From the IMG/VR virus record IMGVR_UViG_3300029258_003221, positions 170,632 through 234,631 of that record: a stretch of 64,000 nucleotides of DNA. One strand, given 5' to 3'. Shown piece by piece: positions 1,312 to 40,653 of this stretch; the first letter of the stretch is position 1, and each line of letters starts with the position of its first letter. Under the pieces are notes generated by a model. It was not told the origin of the DNA. It was given only the letters and a program-made list of their open reading frames with translations, and did not search any database. Made by a program: the position numbers and the translations under genes.

Positions 1312-1339
1312 GTCAAAAGTTCTCCATTTGTTGCCAAGG

Positions 1340-1436
1340 GACCGGGTGCGAGCCGGACTGACTTCCCTACTCCCCCCCTGTCTGGGGGAGAGTCATCCCT
1401 ACCATAGTCAGCAATGGTCGCACTAAGGAAGCGGTC
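1340..1436 (-). ncRNA. candidate structured RNA (nested rod-like hairpin)
   Basis: nested stems GACCG/CGGTC, GTGCGA/TCGCAC, CTGACT/AGTCAG and 10-bp ACTCTCCCCC/GGGGGGGAGT; GC-rich intergenic with no ORF. Confidence 0.5.
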
Positions 1437-5351: not shown

Positions 5352-6119
5352 TTAGATATTCAGATCGAAGCCTGAAAACTCCTCAGAGTAAACTTCGTTT
5401 CCGTCCTTTCCTTCTTTTTCCTGTTCGGCGAGATACTGATCTCGTGCCCAGATGACGAACCAACTCTGAGCAATATCGGTCAGTCTCATCTCAAAGTAGT
5501 TCTCACCGTCGATGACAAAACTCACCAGTCGCTTTTTGACCTTAGCAATTCGTTCATCATCAACGAACTCATTACCTTTCATCTGGGTGTCAACAACTTG
5601 TTCCAAGGTGTTCTTGACGGCTTCTCGGAACTCTTCGTTATCGCCGTAATCACGGTCGTGACAAGCATTGTGAACAACCTGACCTGCCAATGGCAAAGAA
5701 TCCAACAGGTCACCATAACCATCGTCACCTTTGTCCTCGACCACATTAAACAGAGGCTTGTACAAAGCTCGTTTGTAATGCTCCCATGTCTTAGCGAAGC
5801 GAAGTGCTTCATCAAAGGTGTAGGGGCATTCTTCGTAGCGATAGCCGCCTCTGGAATCCCAGACCTGAACCTTGCCAGCAGCACTCTGCACTCGGAAAAA
5901 CTCTGAGATAGCATCCTTTGCTGCATCCTGTCGGGTGATTCGTTCGACAACGAGCGGTCGGAAATACTTCTCAAGGATTTCCCAAAACCGATCACCATCC
6001 AACACAGGCAGTTCTTCCATGTAGTGGCGAAAGGCTTTACCAAACTTGGCACCGACACGGTTGTATTCCAGTGCCAGTTCCTGTGCATCGATTGTTTCCA
6101 TATCAAACAGTTTGGTCAT
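5352..6119 (-). CDS. hypothetical protein
   Basis: 255-aa ORF. Confidence 0.8.
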   Translation of the reverse strand: MTKLFDMETIDAQELALEYNRVGAKFGKAFRHYMEELPVLDGDRFWEILEKYFRPLVVERITRQDAAKDAISEFFRVQSAAGKVQVWDSRGGYRYEECPYTFDEALRFAKTWEHYKRALYKPLFNVVEDKGDDGYGDLLDSLPLAGQVVHNACHDRDYGDNEEFREAVKNTLEQVVDTQMKGNEFVDDERIAKVKKRLVSFVIDGENYFEMRLTDIAQSWFVIWARDQYLAEQEKEGKDGNEVYSEEFSGFDLNI

Positions 6120-8458: not shown

Positions 8459-8702
8459 TTATGTCGAATGAACGATTGCGATGCAACCCTCTCCGATCTC
8501 CATCACCCCATCATCAAGGGCAATTTCCAATTCATCTTCAGTCACATCAGGATTAACTGAACGGCACCACTGTCGAAACAGTGCTTGTGCCACCTGCACG
8601 TTTTCCGGGGTGTCCTCATAGGACACAAGTTCATCGATCAAAAAAATTCTCACTGTTCCTACAGTCAATAACATTGACTGTGCTGATTCGCTTGGCTGTC
8701 AC
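8459..8702 (-). pseudogene. small gene frameshifted at a T7 run (or programmed slippage)
   Basis: AGGAG + GTG at 8702 reads VTAKRISTVNVIDCRNSENFFDR*; one T fewer joins the 8459..8674 frame (ENFLIDELVSYEDTPEN...). Confidence 0.55.
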
Positions 8703-21762: not shown

Positions 21763-21925
21763 AGCAAGGTTCTTTGACATCCTGAAGCTCCTTTCTCATA
21801 ACAGTTACATTCTTTGGTGCTTCAATGCCAATTTTTACCTGACTGTTTGTTGATCGAATCACAGTGATGACAATATCATCACCAATGACGATCCTTTCTC
21901 CGGCTTTTCTTGAAAGAACGAGCAT
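21749..21925 (-). CDS. csrA: carbon storage regulator CsrA
   Basis: MLVLSRKAGERIVIGDDIVITVI...QVKIGIEAPKNVTVMRKEL; AAGGAG SD. Confidence 0.95.
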   Translation of the reverse strand: MLVLSRKAGERIVIGDDIVITVIRSTNSQVKIGIEAPKNVTVMRKELQDVKEPCYDNA

Positions 21926-24993: not shown

Positions 24994-26405
24994 CTAATTT
25001 GCGGGCAGGAAACCCCTACGGCGAAGCCGCTAGGTTGCAAAGCGAGTGAGCGTAGCGAACGAGACTGCAACCTAGCCTCTTTAGGGTAGTGGGAGGAATG
25101 CCCGCCTCCAAAATAATTAGGACAAAATTGAAATAATTTACGGCAAAATCTGTTTCTACCTACTCTATATAAGAGTGGTATATGAAACAGATAAGAACCG
25201 TTAAACTGCAATTGAAAGTTGATAGCACAATGTTCAAGCCAACGCTTGAGGCATACACCAATGCTTTCAACTATGTATGTCAAACTGCTTGGGACAACCA
25301 AGAGTTTAACGGAGTTCGTCTGCACCACCTGACCTATCACCAAGTCCGTCAAAATACAGGACTTAAAAGCCAACTTGCCATTTCTGCCAGAGTCAAAGCA
25401 ACTGAAGCACTTGCGGCAGTCCAAGCAAGAAAGAAGAAAGGAAAGAAAGTTTCCTGTCCTCAAAGTAAATGCTCGGCAATTCGCTATGATGACCGAAGTT
25501 TGACGATTGACTTTGCTAAACGAACCATCAACATCTTGACGCTGGACGGCAGAGTCAGACTTCCCATCTTTGTTCCCAAATACTTTGAGCAATATCTTAC
25601 TTGGAAACGCTGTTCGGCAGACCTTTTCCAAGTCAAAGGTAAAACATTTTTGCATATTGTATTTGAGAAAGAAACCGAAGATGTTGTGCCTAACGGGAAG
25701 TTCGTGGGGATTGATCGTGGCATTAAAAAGATTGCTGTGGTTAGTGATAATAGGTTCTTCGGTGGTAGAAGAATTAAACAATTGAGTGAACGATATGAGA
25801 GGTTGAGGGGACAACTTCAAAGCAAGAAGTCCCGATCCGCAAAAAGACACTTGGCTAAAATCAGTCGAAGCGAACGGCTTATGCGGAAGGACATCAACCA
25901 TTGCATTACCAAACAAATTGTTGAAGGTCTTGAAGAAGGAACAACCATTGTTCTTGAAAAACTGACTGGTATTCGTGGTGGAGCAAGGAAACTTAACCAA
26001 GAACAAAGACTTGAAGGTAAAAAAACTTTGCGAAAACCACAACGCAAGGAAGTGAACAAGTGGAACTTCTTTCAGTTTGAGCAATTCCTTGCTTACAAAG
26101 CGATGGCTAAGAATTGCCAAGTTGTGTTTGTTGACGCACGATACACCAGCCAACGCTGTAGCAAGTGCGGACACATACACAAAGGCAATCGCCATAAGCA
26201 AAGTAAGTTCAAGTGCAGGAATTGTGGTTTCCAACTGAATGCAGACCTCAACGCTAGTAAAAATATCGTACTCAAATATCTGGACGCTACAAGCTATCCA
26301 GATTGGGCAACTGTCAATTTGCCTAACGGCGGCTTAACGGCTGCTAATGTTCCCGCTTAAAGTGGTGCAACAAGCCCCGCCGTCTTTAGCGGCGGGGTAA
26401 TTGAC
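24994..26405 (+). mobile_element. IS200/IS605 family, TnpB-only (IS1341-like) element
   Basis: left-end hairpin GCGGGCA...TGCCCGC (25001-25105); right-end hairpin CCCCGCCG/CGGCGGGG ending TTGAC at 26405; no tnpA; left boundary after (T)TCAT inferred. Confidence 0.9.
25182..26360 (+). CDS. tnpB: RNA-guided endonuclease TnpB
   Basis: RuvC-I GIDRG, RuvC-II VLEKL, zinc finger CSKCG/CRNCG, RuvC-III NADLNAS all intact. Confidence 0.95.
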   Translation: MKQIRTVKLQLKVDSTMFKPTLEAYTNAFNYVCQTAWDNQEFNGVRLHHLTYHQVRQNTGLKSQLAISARVKATEALAAVQARKKKGKKVSCPQSKCSAIRYDDRSLTIDFAKRTINILTLDGRVRLPIFVPKYFEQYLTWKRCSADLFQVKGKTFLHIVFEKETEDVVPNGKFVGIDRGIKKIAVVSDNRFFGGRRIKQLSERYERLRGQLQSKKSRSAKRHLAKISRSERLMRKDINHCITKQIVEGLEEGTTIVLEKLTGIRGGARKLNQEQRLEGKKTLRKPQRKEVNKWNFFQFEQFLAYKAMAKNCQVVFVDARYTSQRCSKCGHIHKGNRHKQSKFKCRNCGFQLNADLNASKNIVLKYLDATSYPDWATVNLPNGGLTAANVPA

Positions 26406-34089: not shown

Positions 34090-34983
34090 TTAGGCCACTT
34101 TCTCCTTAGCAAACACGTCTTTCACTTTTTTCAGTGCTCGATCATAGGCGTAAGTTGATGCCATGCGGCTCACAGAATGCTTCTTGGATACTTCTGATTT
34201 TTTGCCGCCACCCAGAACAGTATAAAGAACATCACGCTCCAGTTCTGACAAACCGACTTCTTCAATCACAGCTCGGACCTGATCGATTTCCATGGTCACT
34301 TCGCCATCGAAACTGCTGTAACTGTAACTTGATACAAAATCTTCCCAAGCTACCTCTGGCCCATCAACTGCCACGGCTAACGCTGAAAAGCATTCTTCAC
34401 GATCAGAATCATTGATCTCCAGTTTATTTGCGGCCTGCTCAAAAGAAAGACCTTTAGACATAAGGTCTCGCAGATCTGGGAGCATACGAAGAATTCGTTT
34501 TTTGACGCTTGAAAGGAAATGATCAGTGCGAATGTAATCGATCATTCGATTCCGAATGGCATTACAGGAATATGTATCAAATTTCGCATTGCCGCTATAG
34601 GCAAACATCGAATCGGAGATTGCCCAAATCCCCTCTTGAATGAAATCTTCAATATCGACAGCACGATGACGTAATCTGTGTGCTTTGTAGAAAGGCAGAA
34701 CAATACCGGGCACAAGGCGACAATAACCCTGAAGGACAGGATACTCAATTTCTTTGACAGAGTCCATCGTCTGTTTGACGTAATCTGTCAAAGTCTGAAG
34801 AGTTCCATTGTGATATCTACGCCGAAACTCTTTGATAGAGGGATTTTCGGTGTCAAATTCTTTTTCTGCCGCCGCACGAATAATTGGCTGTGCGTCAGCC
34901 ATAATTGAAGAATATTTCTGTTCTTCTTCTTCTGAGAGAGTACGAGGTTTAATACACCCAATCATGAGGAGATTCCCTTTCAT
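34090..34983 (-). CDS. sigma-70 family sigma factor
   Basis: region 2 EDFIQEGIWAI...KFDTYSCNAIRNRMIDYIR; region 4 LSELERDVL...SEVSK...ALKKVK. Confidence 0.8.
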   Translation of the reverse strand: MKGNLLMIGCIKPRTLSEEEEQKYSSIMADAQPIIRAAAEKEFDTENPSIKEFRRRYHNGTLQTLTDYVKQTMDSVKEIEYPVLQGYCRLVPGIVLPFYKAHRLRHRAVDIEDFIQEGIWAISDSMFAYSGNAKFDTYSCNAIRNRMIDYIRTDHFLSSVKKRILRMLPDLRDLMSKGLSFEQAANKLEINDSDREECFSALAVAVDGPEVAWEDFVSSYSYSSFDGEVTMEIDQVRAVIEEVGLSELERDVLYTVLGGGKKSEVSKKHSVSRMASTYAYDRALKKVKDVFAKEKVA

Positions 34984-36654: not shown

Positions 36655-37410
36655 GTGAGTATGTATGTTAAAACAATGGAGAATACAGTGAAAAACAAGC
36701 CCCTTGTGAGATTTACGATAGGATCAGTCACTAAATTTGGTTTTGACTGCTTAAAAAGAGCAATAAAACAAATACAAAAGTTGTATCCATGCGATATCAC
36801 TGTTTGTTTCAACTGTGATAAAAAACACGTTAAATATTTAAAAAAAGAATTAAACGTCTTTCTTTTTGATCAATCCGTACACCTAAACGATGACCTCACC
36901 CCAATGGGGGTAGCTTGGAAACTTTATCCTCCAAGGCTTGATATCAACCGTCATGAGATCATTATTGATAACGATATCATTTTGGAGTCAACAATCGATG
37001 AAATCGATGATTTTCTCTCTTGTGACGATCATTGTCTCATGCTTCAGGGAATCTCACGTACCTACGGGAGATTTGAAAAACACGTACCTGCCAATCTGAT
37101 GATCAACAGTGGTTTATTTGGTTTGCCGCCCGGATTCGATTTTGCGACTTATGTAAAAAATCACGCAGGAAATAATTGGGAAGAGAATGCTACGGGAATT
37201 CACTCTGAAAGTGTGACTTTTGACGAACAGGGACTTGTTGCTCTGATTTTATCAAACCAGAAACATTTTCTGATTCCCAACACAACAATTACAAATTGCG
37301 AAAGAAAACTTATGAGAGGAAAGGGAATGCACTTTATCGGTCTCAATAGATGGAAACGACATGAGCCATATTCAGAATGGCTCATGTCGCAACAAAAATT
37401 TCACCTTTAG
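36655..37410 (+). CDS. GT-A fold glycosyltransferase-like protein
   Basis: HEIIIDNDIIL DxD motif; INSGLFGLP, DEQG; the only non-IS plus-strand gene. Confidence 0.7.
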   Translation: MSMYVKTMENTVKNKPLVRFTIGSVTKFGFDCLKRAIKQIQKLYPCDITVCFNCDKKHVKYLKKELNVFLFDQSVHLNDDLTPMGVAWKLYPPRLDINRHEIIIDNDIILESTIDEIDDFLSCDDHCLMLQGISRTYGRFEKHVPANLMINSGLFGLPPGFDFATYVKNHAGNNWEENATGIHSESVTFDEQGLVALILSNQKHFLIPNTTITNCERKLMRGKGMHFIGLNRWKRHEPYSEWLMSQQKFHL

Positions 37411-37988
37411 GGCTTCTTGACAAATTCGTGGATGCGATCCAAATCTTTCTGTGAAAATCGAATGTTGTCCGGTCTTTTATCAAGTTTCCAAGGACTGCCT
37501 TCAACATACACATAACGATTTACTCGCTGACCTTTATGGAACTGACGATCTGCCTCTTTGTTAATAGAAGTATTTTGATTTGCCTGAAGGCCCAAGACAT
37601 GAGTTCGATGCATCAATTCTTTGTACCCATCTTCAAGGGCACCAATTCTTTTCTCGGTTTGAGCATCAATACTTGGTCTCAAATCATAACTTTCAGGTTC
37701 TGAATATGGCTGTGTGTATGATTGAGGTGGTTGTTGTGCATACAATTCATTTGAATTGTCTTTGTTCATGAGTGACCAAATTCCAAAAATGGTCGCCAAA
37801 GACAACATGGTTGCAAATGCTCCCAAAAACACTGTTGCACTATTGGACCCACTAGACCCACTAGACCCACTCTGTTCTGGCTGTGATTGTGCATAAACAG
37901 GTGCCGTAAACCTACGTGGCTGACTTGGCCTCGTTCCTGCTCTCACACCATTTTTGATCGTTTCTAAATCTTGTTGACTAAGTTTCAC
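37407..37988 (-). CDS. single-pass membrane protein
   Basis: TM VFLGAFATMLSLATIFGIWSL; GTG start with GGAGG SD. Confidence 0.75.
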   Translation of the reverse strand: MKLSQQDLETIKNGVRAGTRPSQPRRFTAPVYAQSQPEQSGSSGSSGSNSATVFLGAFATMLSLATIFGIWSLMNKDNSNELYAQQPPQSYTQPYSEPESYDLRPSIDAQTEKRIGALEDGYKELMHRTHVLGLQANQNTSINKEADRQFHKGQRVNRYVYVEGSPWKLDKRPDNIRFSQKDLDRIHEFVKKP

Positions 37989-38654
37989 CTATCCTCCTTT
38001 GGTCATTTCTTCTCGCCTAGTATTTATGAGATCTCGAAGCTCTTTTCTTGGCAACTTATCGTGATTGTTATGAAGACGCCTCAATTCCCTGCAATTTTCT
38101 AAACTTATGTCGTAAGCTCCCTTGAGGTTATTACAAACACTACACATTGTTTGGTAATTTCGTAATTCATCTTTGCCACCACGACTTTTTGCAAGAATAT
38201 GATCTTTTGTCATCAGGACCAATCGACTATTCTCTTCAGCATACAAATTAAAATGTGGAGATTGGTCACCGGGATTAATATCCAAGATCATTTTTGTGCC
38301 TTCCAAACCACATGAAACACATGAAGTATTGTCTCTAAACACAAAATAACGATCTGAATTCATTCGCACTTGGTAGATTTGTCCATCTACTTCGTACTCT
38401 TTTTTTACATCTTCTTCGGTAATGTAGGGAAAGACTTCATCGACACTGTAAGTCGCCAGATGTTCCAGCTTCTTACGTTCCTTCATCTTTGCTATGTCGA
38501 GTTGAACACCAAAACCTTCAAAATCATCCCCGTGTGGTTCACATTCGAGTATGCTTTCAAGTAATTTTTTGGCGTGCTTGAGACATTCAGCACGAGGTTT
38601 GTCTGAGTCGAATCTCCACGTTATCGTAGCTATAGCCTTGTAACTGGTCATCAC
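37989..38654 (-). CDS. HNH endonuclease-domain protein
   Basis: CVSCG...TKDHILAKSRGGKDELRNYQTMCSVCNNLKG. Confidence 0.85.
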   Translation of the reverse strand: MMTSYKAIATITWRFDSDKPRAECLKHAKKLLESILECEPHGDDFEGFGVQLDIAKMKERKKLEHLATYSVDEVFPYITEEDVKKEYEVDGQIYQVRMNSDRYFVFRDNTSCVSCGLEGTKMILDINPGDQSPHFNLYAEENSRLVLMTKDHILAKSRGGKDELRNYQTMCSVCNNLKGAYDISLENCRELRRLHNNHDKLPRKELRDLINTRREEMTKGG

Positions 38655-38696
38655 TACTATCTATTCCATTAGAAAAATATTTGCATCCTTGCGAAC

Positions 38697-38725
38697 AGTA
38701 TATACAAAAACTTAGTTTTGAGCAA
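38697..38725 (-). promoter_or_regulatory. sigma70-like promoter
   Basis: TTGCTC-17-TATACT upstream of the HNH gene. Confidence 0.6.
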
Positions 38726-38726
38726 A

Positions 38727-38760
38727 TAAAAAGCACCGGATGACTTGCACCCGGTGCTTT
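38727..38760 (-). terminator. intrinsic terminator
   Basis: AAAGCACCGG/CCGGTGCTTT + T-run. Confidence 0.85.
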
Positions 38761-38885
38761 CAACTTCTTTTGTGTTTGACACACATTCCGGGTCAAGCCC
38801 GTCCCGAGTGAAGTGGCCTCGGGGGAAGCGTGGTCCGAAGACCATCACCGCACCGCCACTCTGTGAGAAGGCACAGAGAACCTAA
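38727..38885 (-). ncRNA. candidate stand-alone small RNA with possible pseudoknot
   Basis: hairpins CTCTGTG/CACAGAG, TGGTC-UUCG-GACCA, CCCGAG/CTCGGG, GGG/CCC, TGTGT/ACACA; GTGGC can pair with loop GCCAC; upstream promoter and own terminator. Confidence 0.6.
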
Positions 38886-38890
38886 TTACA

Positions 38891-38919
38891 ATAGTAATCA
38901 CCAAGCATAATCTTGATAA
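38891..38919 (-). promoter_or_regulatory. possible sigma70-like promoter for the sRNA
   Basis: TTATCA-17-TACTAT. Confidence 0.45.
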
Positions 38920-39129
38920 TTAAGTCATTGCAAGAGCGTTAGAAGGAATTATAGCTGGAGTTTTGGGCCTTACGAAAAGACCAAAAGCTGCATGTGCAAC
39001 CACGCCACTTAAACAAGGTGTGGGCTCCCAATTTCGACTTACAGACGAGTAATAAACATCGCCCATTTGAATCATTTCGCCAACATTCAGAACTCTGAAT
39101 CCTTCCGGGCATTCTGGCACTTGGCTCAT
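38920..39129 (-). CDS. hypothetical protein
   Basis: 69-aa ORF. Confidence 0.7.
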   Translation of the reverse strand: MSQVPECPEGFRVLNVGEMIQMGDVYYSSVSRNWEPTPCLSGVVAHAAFGLFVRPKTPAIIPSNALAMT

Positions 39130-40585: not shown

Positions 40586-40653
40586 TGCTCGTGAGGGGAA
40601 TCGAACCCCTTGACTACACGAATTTAGAATTCGCTGTCTATCCATCCACGAGC
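40586..40653 (-). tRNA. atypical 68-nt tRNA-like element, anticodon CUA, no D-stem
   Basis: acceptor GCTCGTG/CACGAGC + A73; anticodon arm GCGAA-TTCTAAA-TTCGT; T-arm AGGGG-TTCGATT-CCCCT; only 12 nt in the D region; no encoded CCA. Confidence 0.7.

What the first reader, a model, noticed from the sequence alone, without database searches (positions are those of the whole stretch)
38727..38919. Stand-alone small RNA with UUCG hairpin, possible pseudoknot, own promoter and terminator
Seen: TTATCA-17-TACTAT, then five hairpins including C(UUCG)G, a GTGGC segment complementary to the GCCAC loop of a later hairpin, a TTCC/GGAA closing helix, and a strong terminator. No SD-led ORF. Inference: a ~160-nt trans-acting RNA or small ribozyme-like fold that I cannot assign to a known class.
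Basis: partly seen in the sequence, partly recalled or inferred. Interest (0 to 1): 0.6.

Follow-up and report, generated by a model that had tools for sequence, protein, structure and literature searches.

The report
Orphan hairpin-rich RNA element with terminator
A GC-rich stretch of five hairpins ending in a strong transcription terminator really exists between two genes of a huge, probably planctomycete-infecting phage, but it has no relatives anywhere, no convincing promoter of its own and no expression data, so it is at best an unproven, lineage-specific small-RNA candidate.

Summary
The described features exist, but on the MINUS strand (38919->38724). They lie between a 69-aa ORF and an HNH endonuclease gene in a 234.6-kb IMG/VR huge-phage record. 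Solid points: a 14-bp intrinsic terminator; a stem-closed C(UUCG)G loop, the only intergenic one in the genome; a GC peak at the 99.7th percentile; and a ~125-nt body separating the terminator from the preceding stop codon by 162 nt, where other terminators sit 7-63 nt away. Not solid: the promoter is an 8/12 match of a kind found 4.5 times per kb per strand. The body folds no better than shuffles (z = -1.6). The pseudoknot pairing overlaps hairpin 1 and is untestable. There is no Rfam family, paralog or homolog in 9 huge-phage records, IMG/VR, JGI metagenomes, or 151 (covariance model) and 401 (BLAST) Planctomycetota genomes. The model's two best hits were coding-sequence false positives. A 2.5%-diverged strain keeps the body unchanged behind a different upstream gene, which is weak evidence. 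No RNA runs hold it. Best reading: a lineage-specific structured 3'-end RNA, 3'-UTR-type or weakly self-promoted, whose terminator insulates the HNH gene. Function unknown; modest interest.

The parts
38920..39129 (-). Upstream 69-aa ORF (context). Its TAA stop is 38922-38920. It is the last gene of a tightly packed minus-strand unit (90-aa HTH, 186, 161 and 69 aa).
   Evidence: ORF list. Gene calls in public records. No Pfam or PHROG family. Homology to the variant strain breaks exactly at the TAA.
38891..38919 (-). Promoter-like TTATCA (38919-38914), 17-nt spacer, TACTAT (38896-38891). An 8/12 match to the sigma-70 consensus.
   Evidence: Sequence. Not listed by the 9/12 scan. The 8/12 grade occurs 4.5 per kb per strand. 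TTACTATT is shared with the region in front of the HTH operon. The variant strain has a G>A change at 38901 in the spacer.
38859..38878 (-). Hairpin 1: 7-bp stem CUCUGUG/CACAGAG, loop CCUUCU.
   Evidence: MFE and centroid folds.
38855..38859 (-). GUGGC segment, complementary to GCCAC in the hairpin-3 loop (proposed pseudoknot). G38859 is also the last pair of hairpin 1.
   Evidence: Sequence. Not scored as free in the body MFE. No covariation data.
38827..38851 (-). Hairpin 2 with a C(UUCG)G tetraloop (loop 38839-38836) on a 5-bp perfect stem plus a lower imperfect stem.
   Evidence: It is the only intergenic stem-closed cUUCGg in 234 kb.
38803..38823 (-). Hairpin 3: 6-bp stem CCCGAG/CUCGGG, 9-nt loop GCCACUUCA.
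38789..38801 (-). Hairpin 4: CGGG/CCCG, loop CUUGA. UUGAC here is complementary to GUCAA of hairpin 5.
38771..38785 (-). Hairpin 5: UGUGU/ACACA, loop GUCAA.
38724..38761 (-). Intrinsic terminator: 14-bp stem (7 G-C pairs), 5-nt loop, then UUUUUAUUU.
   Evidence: Terminator scan. Fold. One of 26 strong terminators in the record by my own scan, which counts only its 10-bp uninterrupted core, and the one with the GC-richest upstream 120 nt.
37989..38654 (-). Downstream HNH endonuclease gene (context). It has its own promoter-like TTGCTC-15-TATATA in 38723-38697.
   Evidence: Pfam HNH 6.4e-08 and PHROG HNH families. Relatives in other huge phages lack the upstream element.

Best explanation
The stretch is a lineage-specific, non-coding, GC-rich RNA module on the minus strand. 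It consists of a ~125-nt five-hairpin body (38878->38771) and then a strong intrinsic terminator (38761->38724). SHOWN: it starts directly after the stop codon of whichever gene lies upstream. That gene is the 69-aa ORF in this strain and a 322-aa DUF1559 prepilin-like gene in a 2.5%-diverged strain. It ends 70 nt before the HNH gene. INFERRED: it is transcribed as the 3' end of the upstream minus-strand unit, possibly also from a weak promoter of its own. The terminator stops transcription before the HNH homing-endonuclease gene, which has its own promoter-like sequence. The stable hairpins plus the terminator hairpin protect the 3' end. A ~165-195-nt structured RNA therefore accumulates, as with 3'-UTR-type small RNAs that share their mRNA's terminator. 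What the body binds, protein or RNA, is unknown. The loops are C/U-rich, with CUUC four times in or next to loops, so a protein partner or purine-rich Shine-Dalgarno-like sites are the guesses.
For: (1) The terminator is real and strong. (2) The body is extra sequence: the stop-to-terminator distance is 162 nt against 7-63 nt for other same-strand terminators, and it has the highest upstream GC, 0.57, of the 26 strong terminators. (3) The GC peak is at the 99.7th percentile, and stability is in the top 1.2% of genomic windows. (4) It holds the only intergenic stem-closed cUUCGg in the genome. (5) It is non-coding. (6) It has the same strand and tight spacing as the upstream operon. (7) In the variant strain the module is unchanged behind a different gene that ends at the same TAA. 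(8) No substitutions occur in 164 nt at 2.5% overall divergence, P about 0.016. (9) This phage demonstrably carries structured RNA genes that standard detectors can miss: a mini tmRNA, two CUA tRNAs and a tRNA with a 91-nt insertion.
Against: (1) No expression data of any kind. (2) No homolog anywhere, so no covariation. (3) The body is not more stable than composition-matched shuffles, z = -1.6, and the opposite strand is similar. (4) Local divergence around the element is only about 0.8%, so the invariance is not significant locally, P about 0.27. (5) No predicted phage target. (6) The flanking genes are ORFans and the locus is a recombination and homing-endonuclease hot spot, so the body could be a neutral remnant.
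Confidence: 0.45

Rival explanations
1. Stand-alone small RNA gene. A sigma-70-type promoter, TTATCA-17-TACTAT, starts transcription near 38887-38883. The terminator ends it, giving a primary ~160-nt trans-acting RNA independent of the upstream operon.
For: (1) The hexamers and 17-nt spacing exist. (2) TTACTATT occurs only 3 times in 234 kb. Two are intergenic: this site and the region 40 nt before the HTH operon start, which also has a TTGCAC box 17 nt upstream. (3) The strain-to-strain homology block begins exactly 1 nt upstream of TTATCA, so the putative promoter travels with the body. (4) The variant's inserted gene carries TTGACA-type boxes, so the host probably uses sigma-70-like promoters.
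Against: (1) The 8/12 grade is at chance frequency and is not called by the 9/12 scan. (2) TACTAT is not enriched in intergenic DNA, 5 observed against 4.8 expected. (3) There is no extended -10. (4) There are no TSS data. (5) The host RNA polymerase specificity is unknown, and the phage has its own sigma-like gene.
Confidence: 0.25
2. The body has no RNA-level function. The terminator simply ends the upstream operon and insulates the HNH gene. The GC-rich hairpins are a neutral remnant, such as a recombination scar or the leftover of a lost gene or of DNA carried in by homing.
For: (1) No homolog and no covariation. (2) z = -1.6 against shuffles, with no strand asymmetry. (3) The locus is mosaic: 57 nt are replaced by 1180 nt at 38922/38923, 69 nt are replaced by 820 nt inside the HNH gene, and the variant strain has an extra GIY-YIG-like gene. 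(4) The neighbours are ORFans.
Against: (1) A neutral remnant in a 42%-GC genome should decay toward background GC, yet this one is at the 99.7th percentile. (2) It keeps five perfect or near-perfect stems, including a cUUCGg loop. (3) It is unchanged between strains that differ by 2.5% overall.
Confidence: 0.2
3. Cis-acting leader for the downstream genes. A short transcript is terminated in front of the HNH and 193-aa genes unless termination is overridden, as with lambda PR'-tR' 6S RNA and StxS, or with an attenuator or riboswitch.
For: (1) The architecture, a promoter-like site, a ~130-nt structured RNA, a strong terminator and then genes on the same strand, matches promoter-proximal termination units (PMC7547250). 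(2) ACCCGG of hairpin 4 can pair with CCGGGU of the terminator's 5' arm (read from the sequence).
Against: (1) That alternative pairing is only 6 bp against a 14-bp terminator. (2) No riboswitch or leader family matches. (3) The downstream unit is just a homing endonuclease and one ORFan before a convergent gene, not a late operon. (4) The HNH gene has its own promoter-like site after the terminator. (5) No antiterminator gene was identified.
Confidence: 0.06
4. Member of a known structured RNA or ribozyme class, or a small protein gene.
For: The multi-hairpin fold with possible tertiary pairings. A 57-59-aa frame is open across the region, 79 aa if TAG is read through.
Against: (1) No Rfam hit at gathering. 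At E <= 10 there are only terminator-driven or nonsense hits. (2) ARAGORN is negative. (3) The frame has no Shine-Dalgarno, runs through the terminator, and was not called by either public gene caller.
Confidence: 0.04

Closest known systems
3'-UTR-type bacterial small RNAs that share the intrinsic terminator of the upstream mRNA (e.g. CpxQ, SroC, DapZ of enterobacteria; named from my own knowledge, not tested here)
   Same: It lies directly after a stop codon on the same strand. It ends at the operon's intrinsic terminator. It has a structured body of 100-200 nt. It could arise by processing or from an internal promoter.
   Different: Those RNAs are conserved, Hfq-bound, and have a defined seed and targets. 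Here there is no homolog, no expression evidence, no known chaperone and no predicted target.
[quoted passage not shown]
   Same: Phage-encoded. A promoter-proximal strong terminator in front of further genes. The product is a short structured RNA that may gain a regulatory role.
   Different: Those depend on a Q antiterminator and precede the late operon. Here the promoter is unproven, no antiterminator is known, and the downstream genes are a homing endonuclease and one ORFan.
CsrB/RsmZ-type sponges of CsrA
   Same: A multi-hairpin small RNA ending in a terminator, in a genome that encodes CsrA.
   Different: Only three GGA triplets, all at the 3' base of stems and none in a loop. This is about the chance number.
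HEARO / omega RNA of IscB (HNH-endonuclease-associated RNA)
   Same: A structured RNA directly upstream of an HNH-domain gene.
   Different: No Rfam match. The HNH protein has 221 aa and no RuvC domain. A terminator separates the RNA from the gene. HNH relatives, including one 74% identical, lack the RNA.
Stable small RNAs in phage tRNA regions (T4 species C and D RNAs; own knowledge)
   Same: A phage-encoded stable structured RNA of unknown function near tRNA genes and homing endonuclease genes. A CUA tRNA lies 1.7 kb upstream.
   Different: No sequence or structural similarity was tested or is known. It is not adjacent to the tRNA.

Membership tests
Any Rfam 15 family (riboswitches, ribozymes, sRNAs, tRNA, tmRNA, introns) | Covariance-model score at or above the family's gathering threshold | tested here: not met
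   No hit in the window at gathering. At E <= 10 on 38500-39100 the best hits are sX14 (20.5 bits against 80) and ncr1015 (24.5 against 60), both driven by the terminator. ARAGORN is negative.
Intrinsic (Rho-independent) terminator | G+C-rich stem-loop directly followed by a U-run, on the strand of the upstream genes | tested here: met
   14-bp stem, 7 G-C pairs, 5-nt loop, UUUUUAUUU. Termination activity itself was not tested.
Sigma-70-type promoter | Hexamers and spacing matching the consensus better than the background of the genome | tested here: inconclusive
   8/12 with a 17-nt spacer. That grade occurs 4.5 per kb per strand. A shared TTACTATT with the HTH-operon upstream region is a weak hint.
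3'-UTR-type small RNA | Lies between a stop codon and the mRNA's own terminator on the same strand | tested here: met
   The stop is at 38922-38920 and the terminator at 38761-38724, both on the minus strand.
3'-UTR-type small RNA | A discrete stable transcript distinct from the mRNA | not testable with these tools
   No RNA run holds the sequence.
CsrB/RsmZ-type CsrA sponge | Many GGA motifs, mostly in hairpin loops | tested here: not met
   Three GGA triplets in 164 nt, none in a loop (read from the sequence). CsrA is present in the phage.
HEARO / omega RNA | RNA conserved upstream of IscB-type (RuvC + HNH) genes | tested here: not met
   No Rfam hit. The protein has only an HNH domain. The RNA is absent next to 11 HNH relatives and in their whole records.
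Group I intron carrying a homing endonuclease gene | Intron core match and a host gene split into two exons | tested here: not met
   No Intron_gpI hit at E <= 10. In the variant strain an unrelated complete gene lies between the putative exons.
Riboswitch or attenuator leader | Known aptamer, or a competing antiterminator helix of comparable strength | tested here: not met
   No aptamer family. The only alternative pairing seen is 6 bp against a 14-bp terminator (from the sequence). Ligand response is not testable here.
Conserved structured RNA (any new family) | Homologs with compensatory base changes | tested here: not met
   Only identical copies exist, in strains or samples. Model R1 found nothing in 9 huge-phage records. 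Its hits in 151 Planctomycetota genomes were coding false positives.

The most novel reading that the evidence does not exclude
The element is a genuine, lineage-specific regulatory or protein-binding RNA gene of a huge planctomycete-infecting phage. It would have a compact tertiary fold, with junction-to-loop-3 and loop-4-to-loop-5 pairings and C/U-rich CUUC loops, and would represent an RNA class with no described relatives.
Probability: 0.3. Interest if true: 0.5.

Novelty: new member of a known kind. Interest (0 to 1): 0.3.

Why it matters
If the RNA is real, it would add a small-RNA gene to the huge phages of Planctomycetota. That virus-host pair has no cultured model, and its RNA biology is unknown. 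The same phage already carries a mini tmRNA, amber-reading tRNAs and a CsrA. Small RNAs of virulent and jumbo phages are barely charted: the PhiKZ transcriptome predicted one, and Northern blotting did not confirm it (PMC8244752). If it is only a long structured 3' end, it is ordinary. Either way the case shows two things. A promoter-like hexamer pair carries no weight here. A single-sequence covariance model gives misleading E-values in GC-rich genomes.

Tried and rejected
1. BLAST of the intergenic region against INPHARED phages: nothing.
2. Close relatives of the flanking 161-, 193- and 397-aa proteins in IMG/VR: none. The word search on the 161-aa protein found only the strain variant.
3. 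HNH-linked RNA: 11 HNH relatives were fetched and none has the element upstream or elsewhere in its record. One weak BLAST hit in G001 lies in coding sequence.
4. Exact or gapped DNA words. Three IMG/VR scans gave nothing or a chance coding hit, L040. The JGI metagenome scan with the pseudoknot signature returned only the same phage at 100% identity.
5. Host-derived RNA. A DUF1559 signature gave planctomycete handles. Model R1 on 151 genomes gave two full-length hits that looked like covariation in hairpin 1. One lies inside a cytidylyltransferase-like gene. A partial hit lies inside ilvD. The third hit is a generic hairpin leader. BLAST on 401 genomes gave only 17-34-nt fragments.
6. CsrA sponge: rejected on GGA count and position.
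7. Coding reading, including TAG read-through, which was justified by two CUA tRNAs: rejected.
8. Trans target among phage translation-initiation regions: no outlier.
9. Recurrent promoter motif: TACTAT is not enriched.
10. CUUC occurring four times: P = 0.0015 for that word, but 25% of shuffles have some 4-mer four times.
11. Expression: no RNA run holds the sequence.

Full report
WHERE AND WHAT. The window is the last 64 kb of a 234,631-bp IMG/VR virus record that CheckV rates 44% complete, so this is a huge phage. There the stretch lies between the TAA stop (38922-38920) of a 69-aa ORF and an HNH endonuclease gene (37989-38654; Pfam HNH, many PHROG HNH families). The 69-aa ORF is the last gene of a tightly packed minus-strand unit of a 90-aa HTH protein and 186-, 161- and 69-aa proteins. 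Public gene callers put no gene in the 265-nt gap.

CHECKING THE OBSERVATION. Every listed feature is present:
- TTATCA-17-TACTAT at 38919-38891.
- Five hairpins: H1 38878-38859; H2 about 38851-38827 with C(UUCG)G; H3 38823-38803 with loop GCCACUUCA; H4 38801-38789; H5 38785-38771.
- The GUGGC/GCCAC and UUCC/GGAA complements.
- A 14-bp terminator (38761-38729) followed by UUUUUAUUU.

The whole 164 nt folds at -66 kcal/mol (z = -3.4), but the terminator carries that. Without it the body gives z = -1.6 (14 of 200 shuffles as good), and the opposite strand gives z = -1.3.

The promoter is an 8/12 consensus match. Such matches occur 4.5 times per kb per strand in this genome, and the tool's 9/12 scan did not list it. 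TACTAT is not enriched between genes. The one hint is that TTACTATT occurs three times in 234 kb, and two are intergenic: here and about 40 nt before the HTH operon, where a TTGCAC box sits 17 nt upstream.

In the GUGGC segment the first G is also the last pair of H1. My shuffle test did not score that pairing and instead flagged a loop-4/loop-5 complement, UUGAC/GUCAA, seen in 13 of 300 shuffles and found post hoc.

WHY THE BODY IS NOT JUST A TERMINATOR.
- Other strong same-strand terminators in this record sit 7-63 nt after the preceding stop codon. This one sits 162 nt after it and has the GC-richest upstream 120 nt of all 26.
- The 120-nt GC maximum is 0.59 against a mean of 0.42, the 99.7th percentile.
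- The body's MFE is in the top 1.2% of genomic 118-nt windows.
- Of 98 CTTCGG hexamers, only two are closed by stems of 5 bp or more, and this is the only intergenic one.

The stability comes from composition, but the composition is itself anomalous for a 42%-GC phage.

KNOWN CLASSES. Rfam 15 gives nothing at gathering for the window. At E <= 10 on the locus it gives only terminator-driven or meaningless hits. ARAGORN is negative. The phage does encode CsrA (79.5 bits), but the RNA has three GGA triplets, all at stem bases, so it is not a CsrB/RsmZ-type sponge. Reading TAG through, which two CUA tRNAs justify testing, opens only a 79-aa frame that runs through the terminator. Genome-wide there is no clear sign of TAG recoding.

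RELATIVES. The element is single-copy in the record.
- INPHARED phages: no match.
- The flanking 161-, 193- and 397-aa proteins have no relatives beyond strain variants.
- The HNH gene has relatives in 11 huge-phage contigs. None has the element upstream. BLAST (five records) and a covariance model (R1, nine records) found nothing in those whole records. The closest record, G001 (HNH 74% identical), is partly syntenic downstream but has an unrelated upstream region.
- Exact and gapped words in IMG/VR and JGI metagenomes returned only the identical phage or a chance coding hit.

HOST TEST. A variant strain carries a DUF1559/N-methyl prepilin-like gene. The DUF1559 signature hits almost only Planctomycetota genomes. 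I therefore searched that phylum.
- BLAST on 401 genomes gave only 17-34-nt fragments.
- R1 on 151 genomes gave two full-length hits with per-genome E of 8.7e-5 and 6.5e-4, one of which seemed to show compensatory changes in H1.
- On inspection that hit lies in a cytidylyltransferase-like gene, a partial hit lies in ilvD, and the other full-length hit is an unrelated hairpin-rich leader.

These are false positives. The model's E-values cannot be trusted in GC-rich DNA.

STRAINS. Eleven DNA runs from six studies of sediment and seawater hold the locus. None is on record as RNA. One strain (Logan contigs L023 and L024) differs by 2.5% over 14.2 kb. In it, 57 nt at the end of the small ORF are replaced by 1180 nt carrying the 322-aa DUF1559 gene with its own TTGACA-type boxes. 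That gene ends at the same TAA directly before TTATCA. A second replacement lies inside the HNH gene, with an added GIY-YIG-like gene. The RNA body is unchanged. The only differences are G>A at 38901 in the promoter-like spacer and one change at 38704. At the overall rate, zero changes in 164 nt has P about 0.016. At the local rate of about 0.8% it has P about 0.27. Conservation is therefore suggestive at most, and no covariation is available.

FUNCTION TESTS IN SILICO. No phage translation-initiation region pairs with the RNA better than with shuffled versions: best -47.0 against -43.6 +/- 2.8, and about 10% of shuffles do as well. CUUC occurs four times in or beside loops (P = 0.0015 for that word), but some 4-mer reaches four copies in 25% of shuffles.

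INTERPRETATION. The best-supported reading (0.45) is a lineage-specific structured RNA module forming the 3' end of the upstream transcription unit. Its terminator insulates the homing-endonuclease gene. Its hairpins would make a stable 165-195-nt 3'-end RNA, like 3'-UTR-type small RNAs.

The two differ only in where the 5' end arises. A neutral remnant plus terminator (0.2) cannot be excluded, given the mosaic, ORFan-rich locus. A lambda-6S/StxS-like terminated leader (PMC7547250) fits the layout but not the gene content (0.06). Known classes, ribozymes and a peptide are essentially excluded (0.04).

Small RNAs of lytic and jumbo phages are poorly charted. The single PhiKZ prediction failed Northern confirmation (PMC8244752). 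A confirmed case would therefore be useful, though not surprising.

VERDICT. This is an orphan candidate of modest interest, and it needs transcript mapping to be decided.

Noticed in passing
window 40586-40653 (-), with a 15-bp hairpin plus UUUU just upstream at 40698-40659: A tRNA with anticodon CUA (amber-reading) and a shortened D-arm, 29.9 bits against a gathering score of 29. ARAGORN missed it, and so did Rfam's default filters on the whole window. It lies between a terminator and the promoter region of the HTH operon.
   Followed up: partly
genome G000 5677-5751 and 5757-5914 (outside the window; L179 78-152 and 158-315): A second CUA-anticodon tRNA (52 bits). Directly beside it is a tRNA with a 91-nt insertion in the anticodon loop (33.4 bits). 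Two amber-reading tRNAs suggest TAG suppression or recoding, but a crude ORF-length test shows no clear genome-wide TAG recoding.
   Followed up: partly
genome G000 about 134420-134560 (-) (L035 15620-15760): A miniature tmRNA: 141 nt matching the 374-position Rfam model end to end (53.7 bits). ARAGORN gives the tag peptide DNEKRPMFRSCLG.
   Followed up: no
window about 21779-21925 (-): The phage encodes a CsrA homolog (Pfam PF02599, 79.5 bits, 97-aa open frame).
   Followed up: no
window 37989-38654 and 37407-37988 (-): The HNH ORF ends in TAG, and the next ORF (193 aa) starts in the very next codon in the same frame. With amber-reading tRNAs in the genome, read-through would give a 420-aa fusion.
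   Followed up: no
L023 8860-9828 and L024 4666-5325 (variant strain); junctions at window 38922/38980 and 38035/38105: This is a strain-variable hot spot. One strain has an extra 322-aa DUF1559/N-methyl prepilin-like gene typical of Planctomycetota, which is a clue to the host. It also has a T5orf172/MUG113 (GIY-YIG-like) gene next to the HNH gene.
   Followed up: partly
window 26375-26397 and genome G000 8668-8690: The same 23-nt perfect hairpin, CCCCGCCG-CUAAAGA-CGGCGGGG, with similar flanks, occurs in two distant intergenic regions.
   Followed up: no
window 1312-1435; genome G000 129591-129721 and 137436-137595: Three more GC-rich (0.54-0.57), strongly folding intergenic regions with no Rfam match even in the sensitive mode. 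They are possible further orphan RNA elements.
   Followed up: partly
window 34090-34965 (-); L023 1-139: A sigma-70 region-2-like gene (weak Pfam hit) lies 4 kb downstream of the element. A 552-aa WGR/PARP-domain gene lies upstream in the same phage.
   Followed up: no
L161 1501-1664 (Planctomycetota genome G099): A cautionary case. A single-sequence covariance model gave a 26.7-bit, apparently covarying full-length hit (per-genome E = 8.7e-5) that lies inside a cytidylyltransferase-like coding gene.
   Followed up: yes
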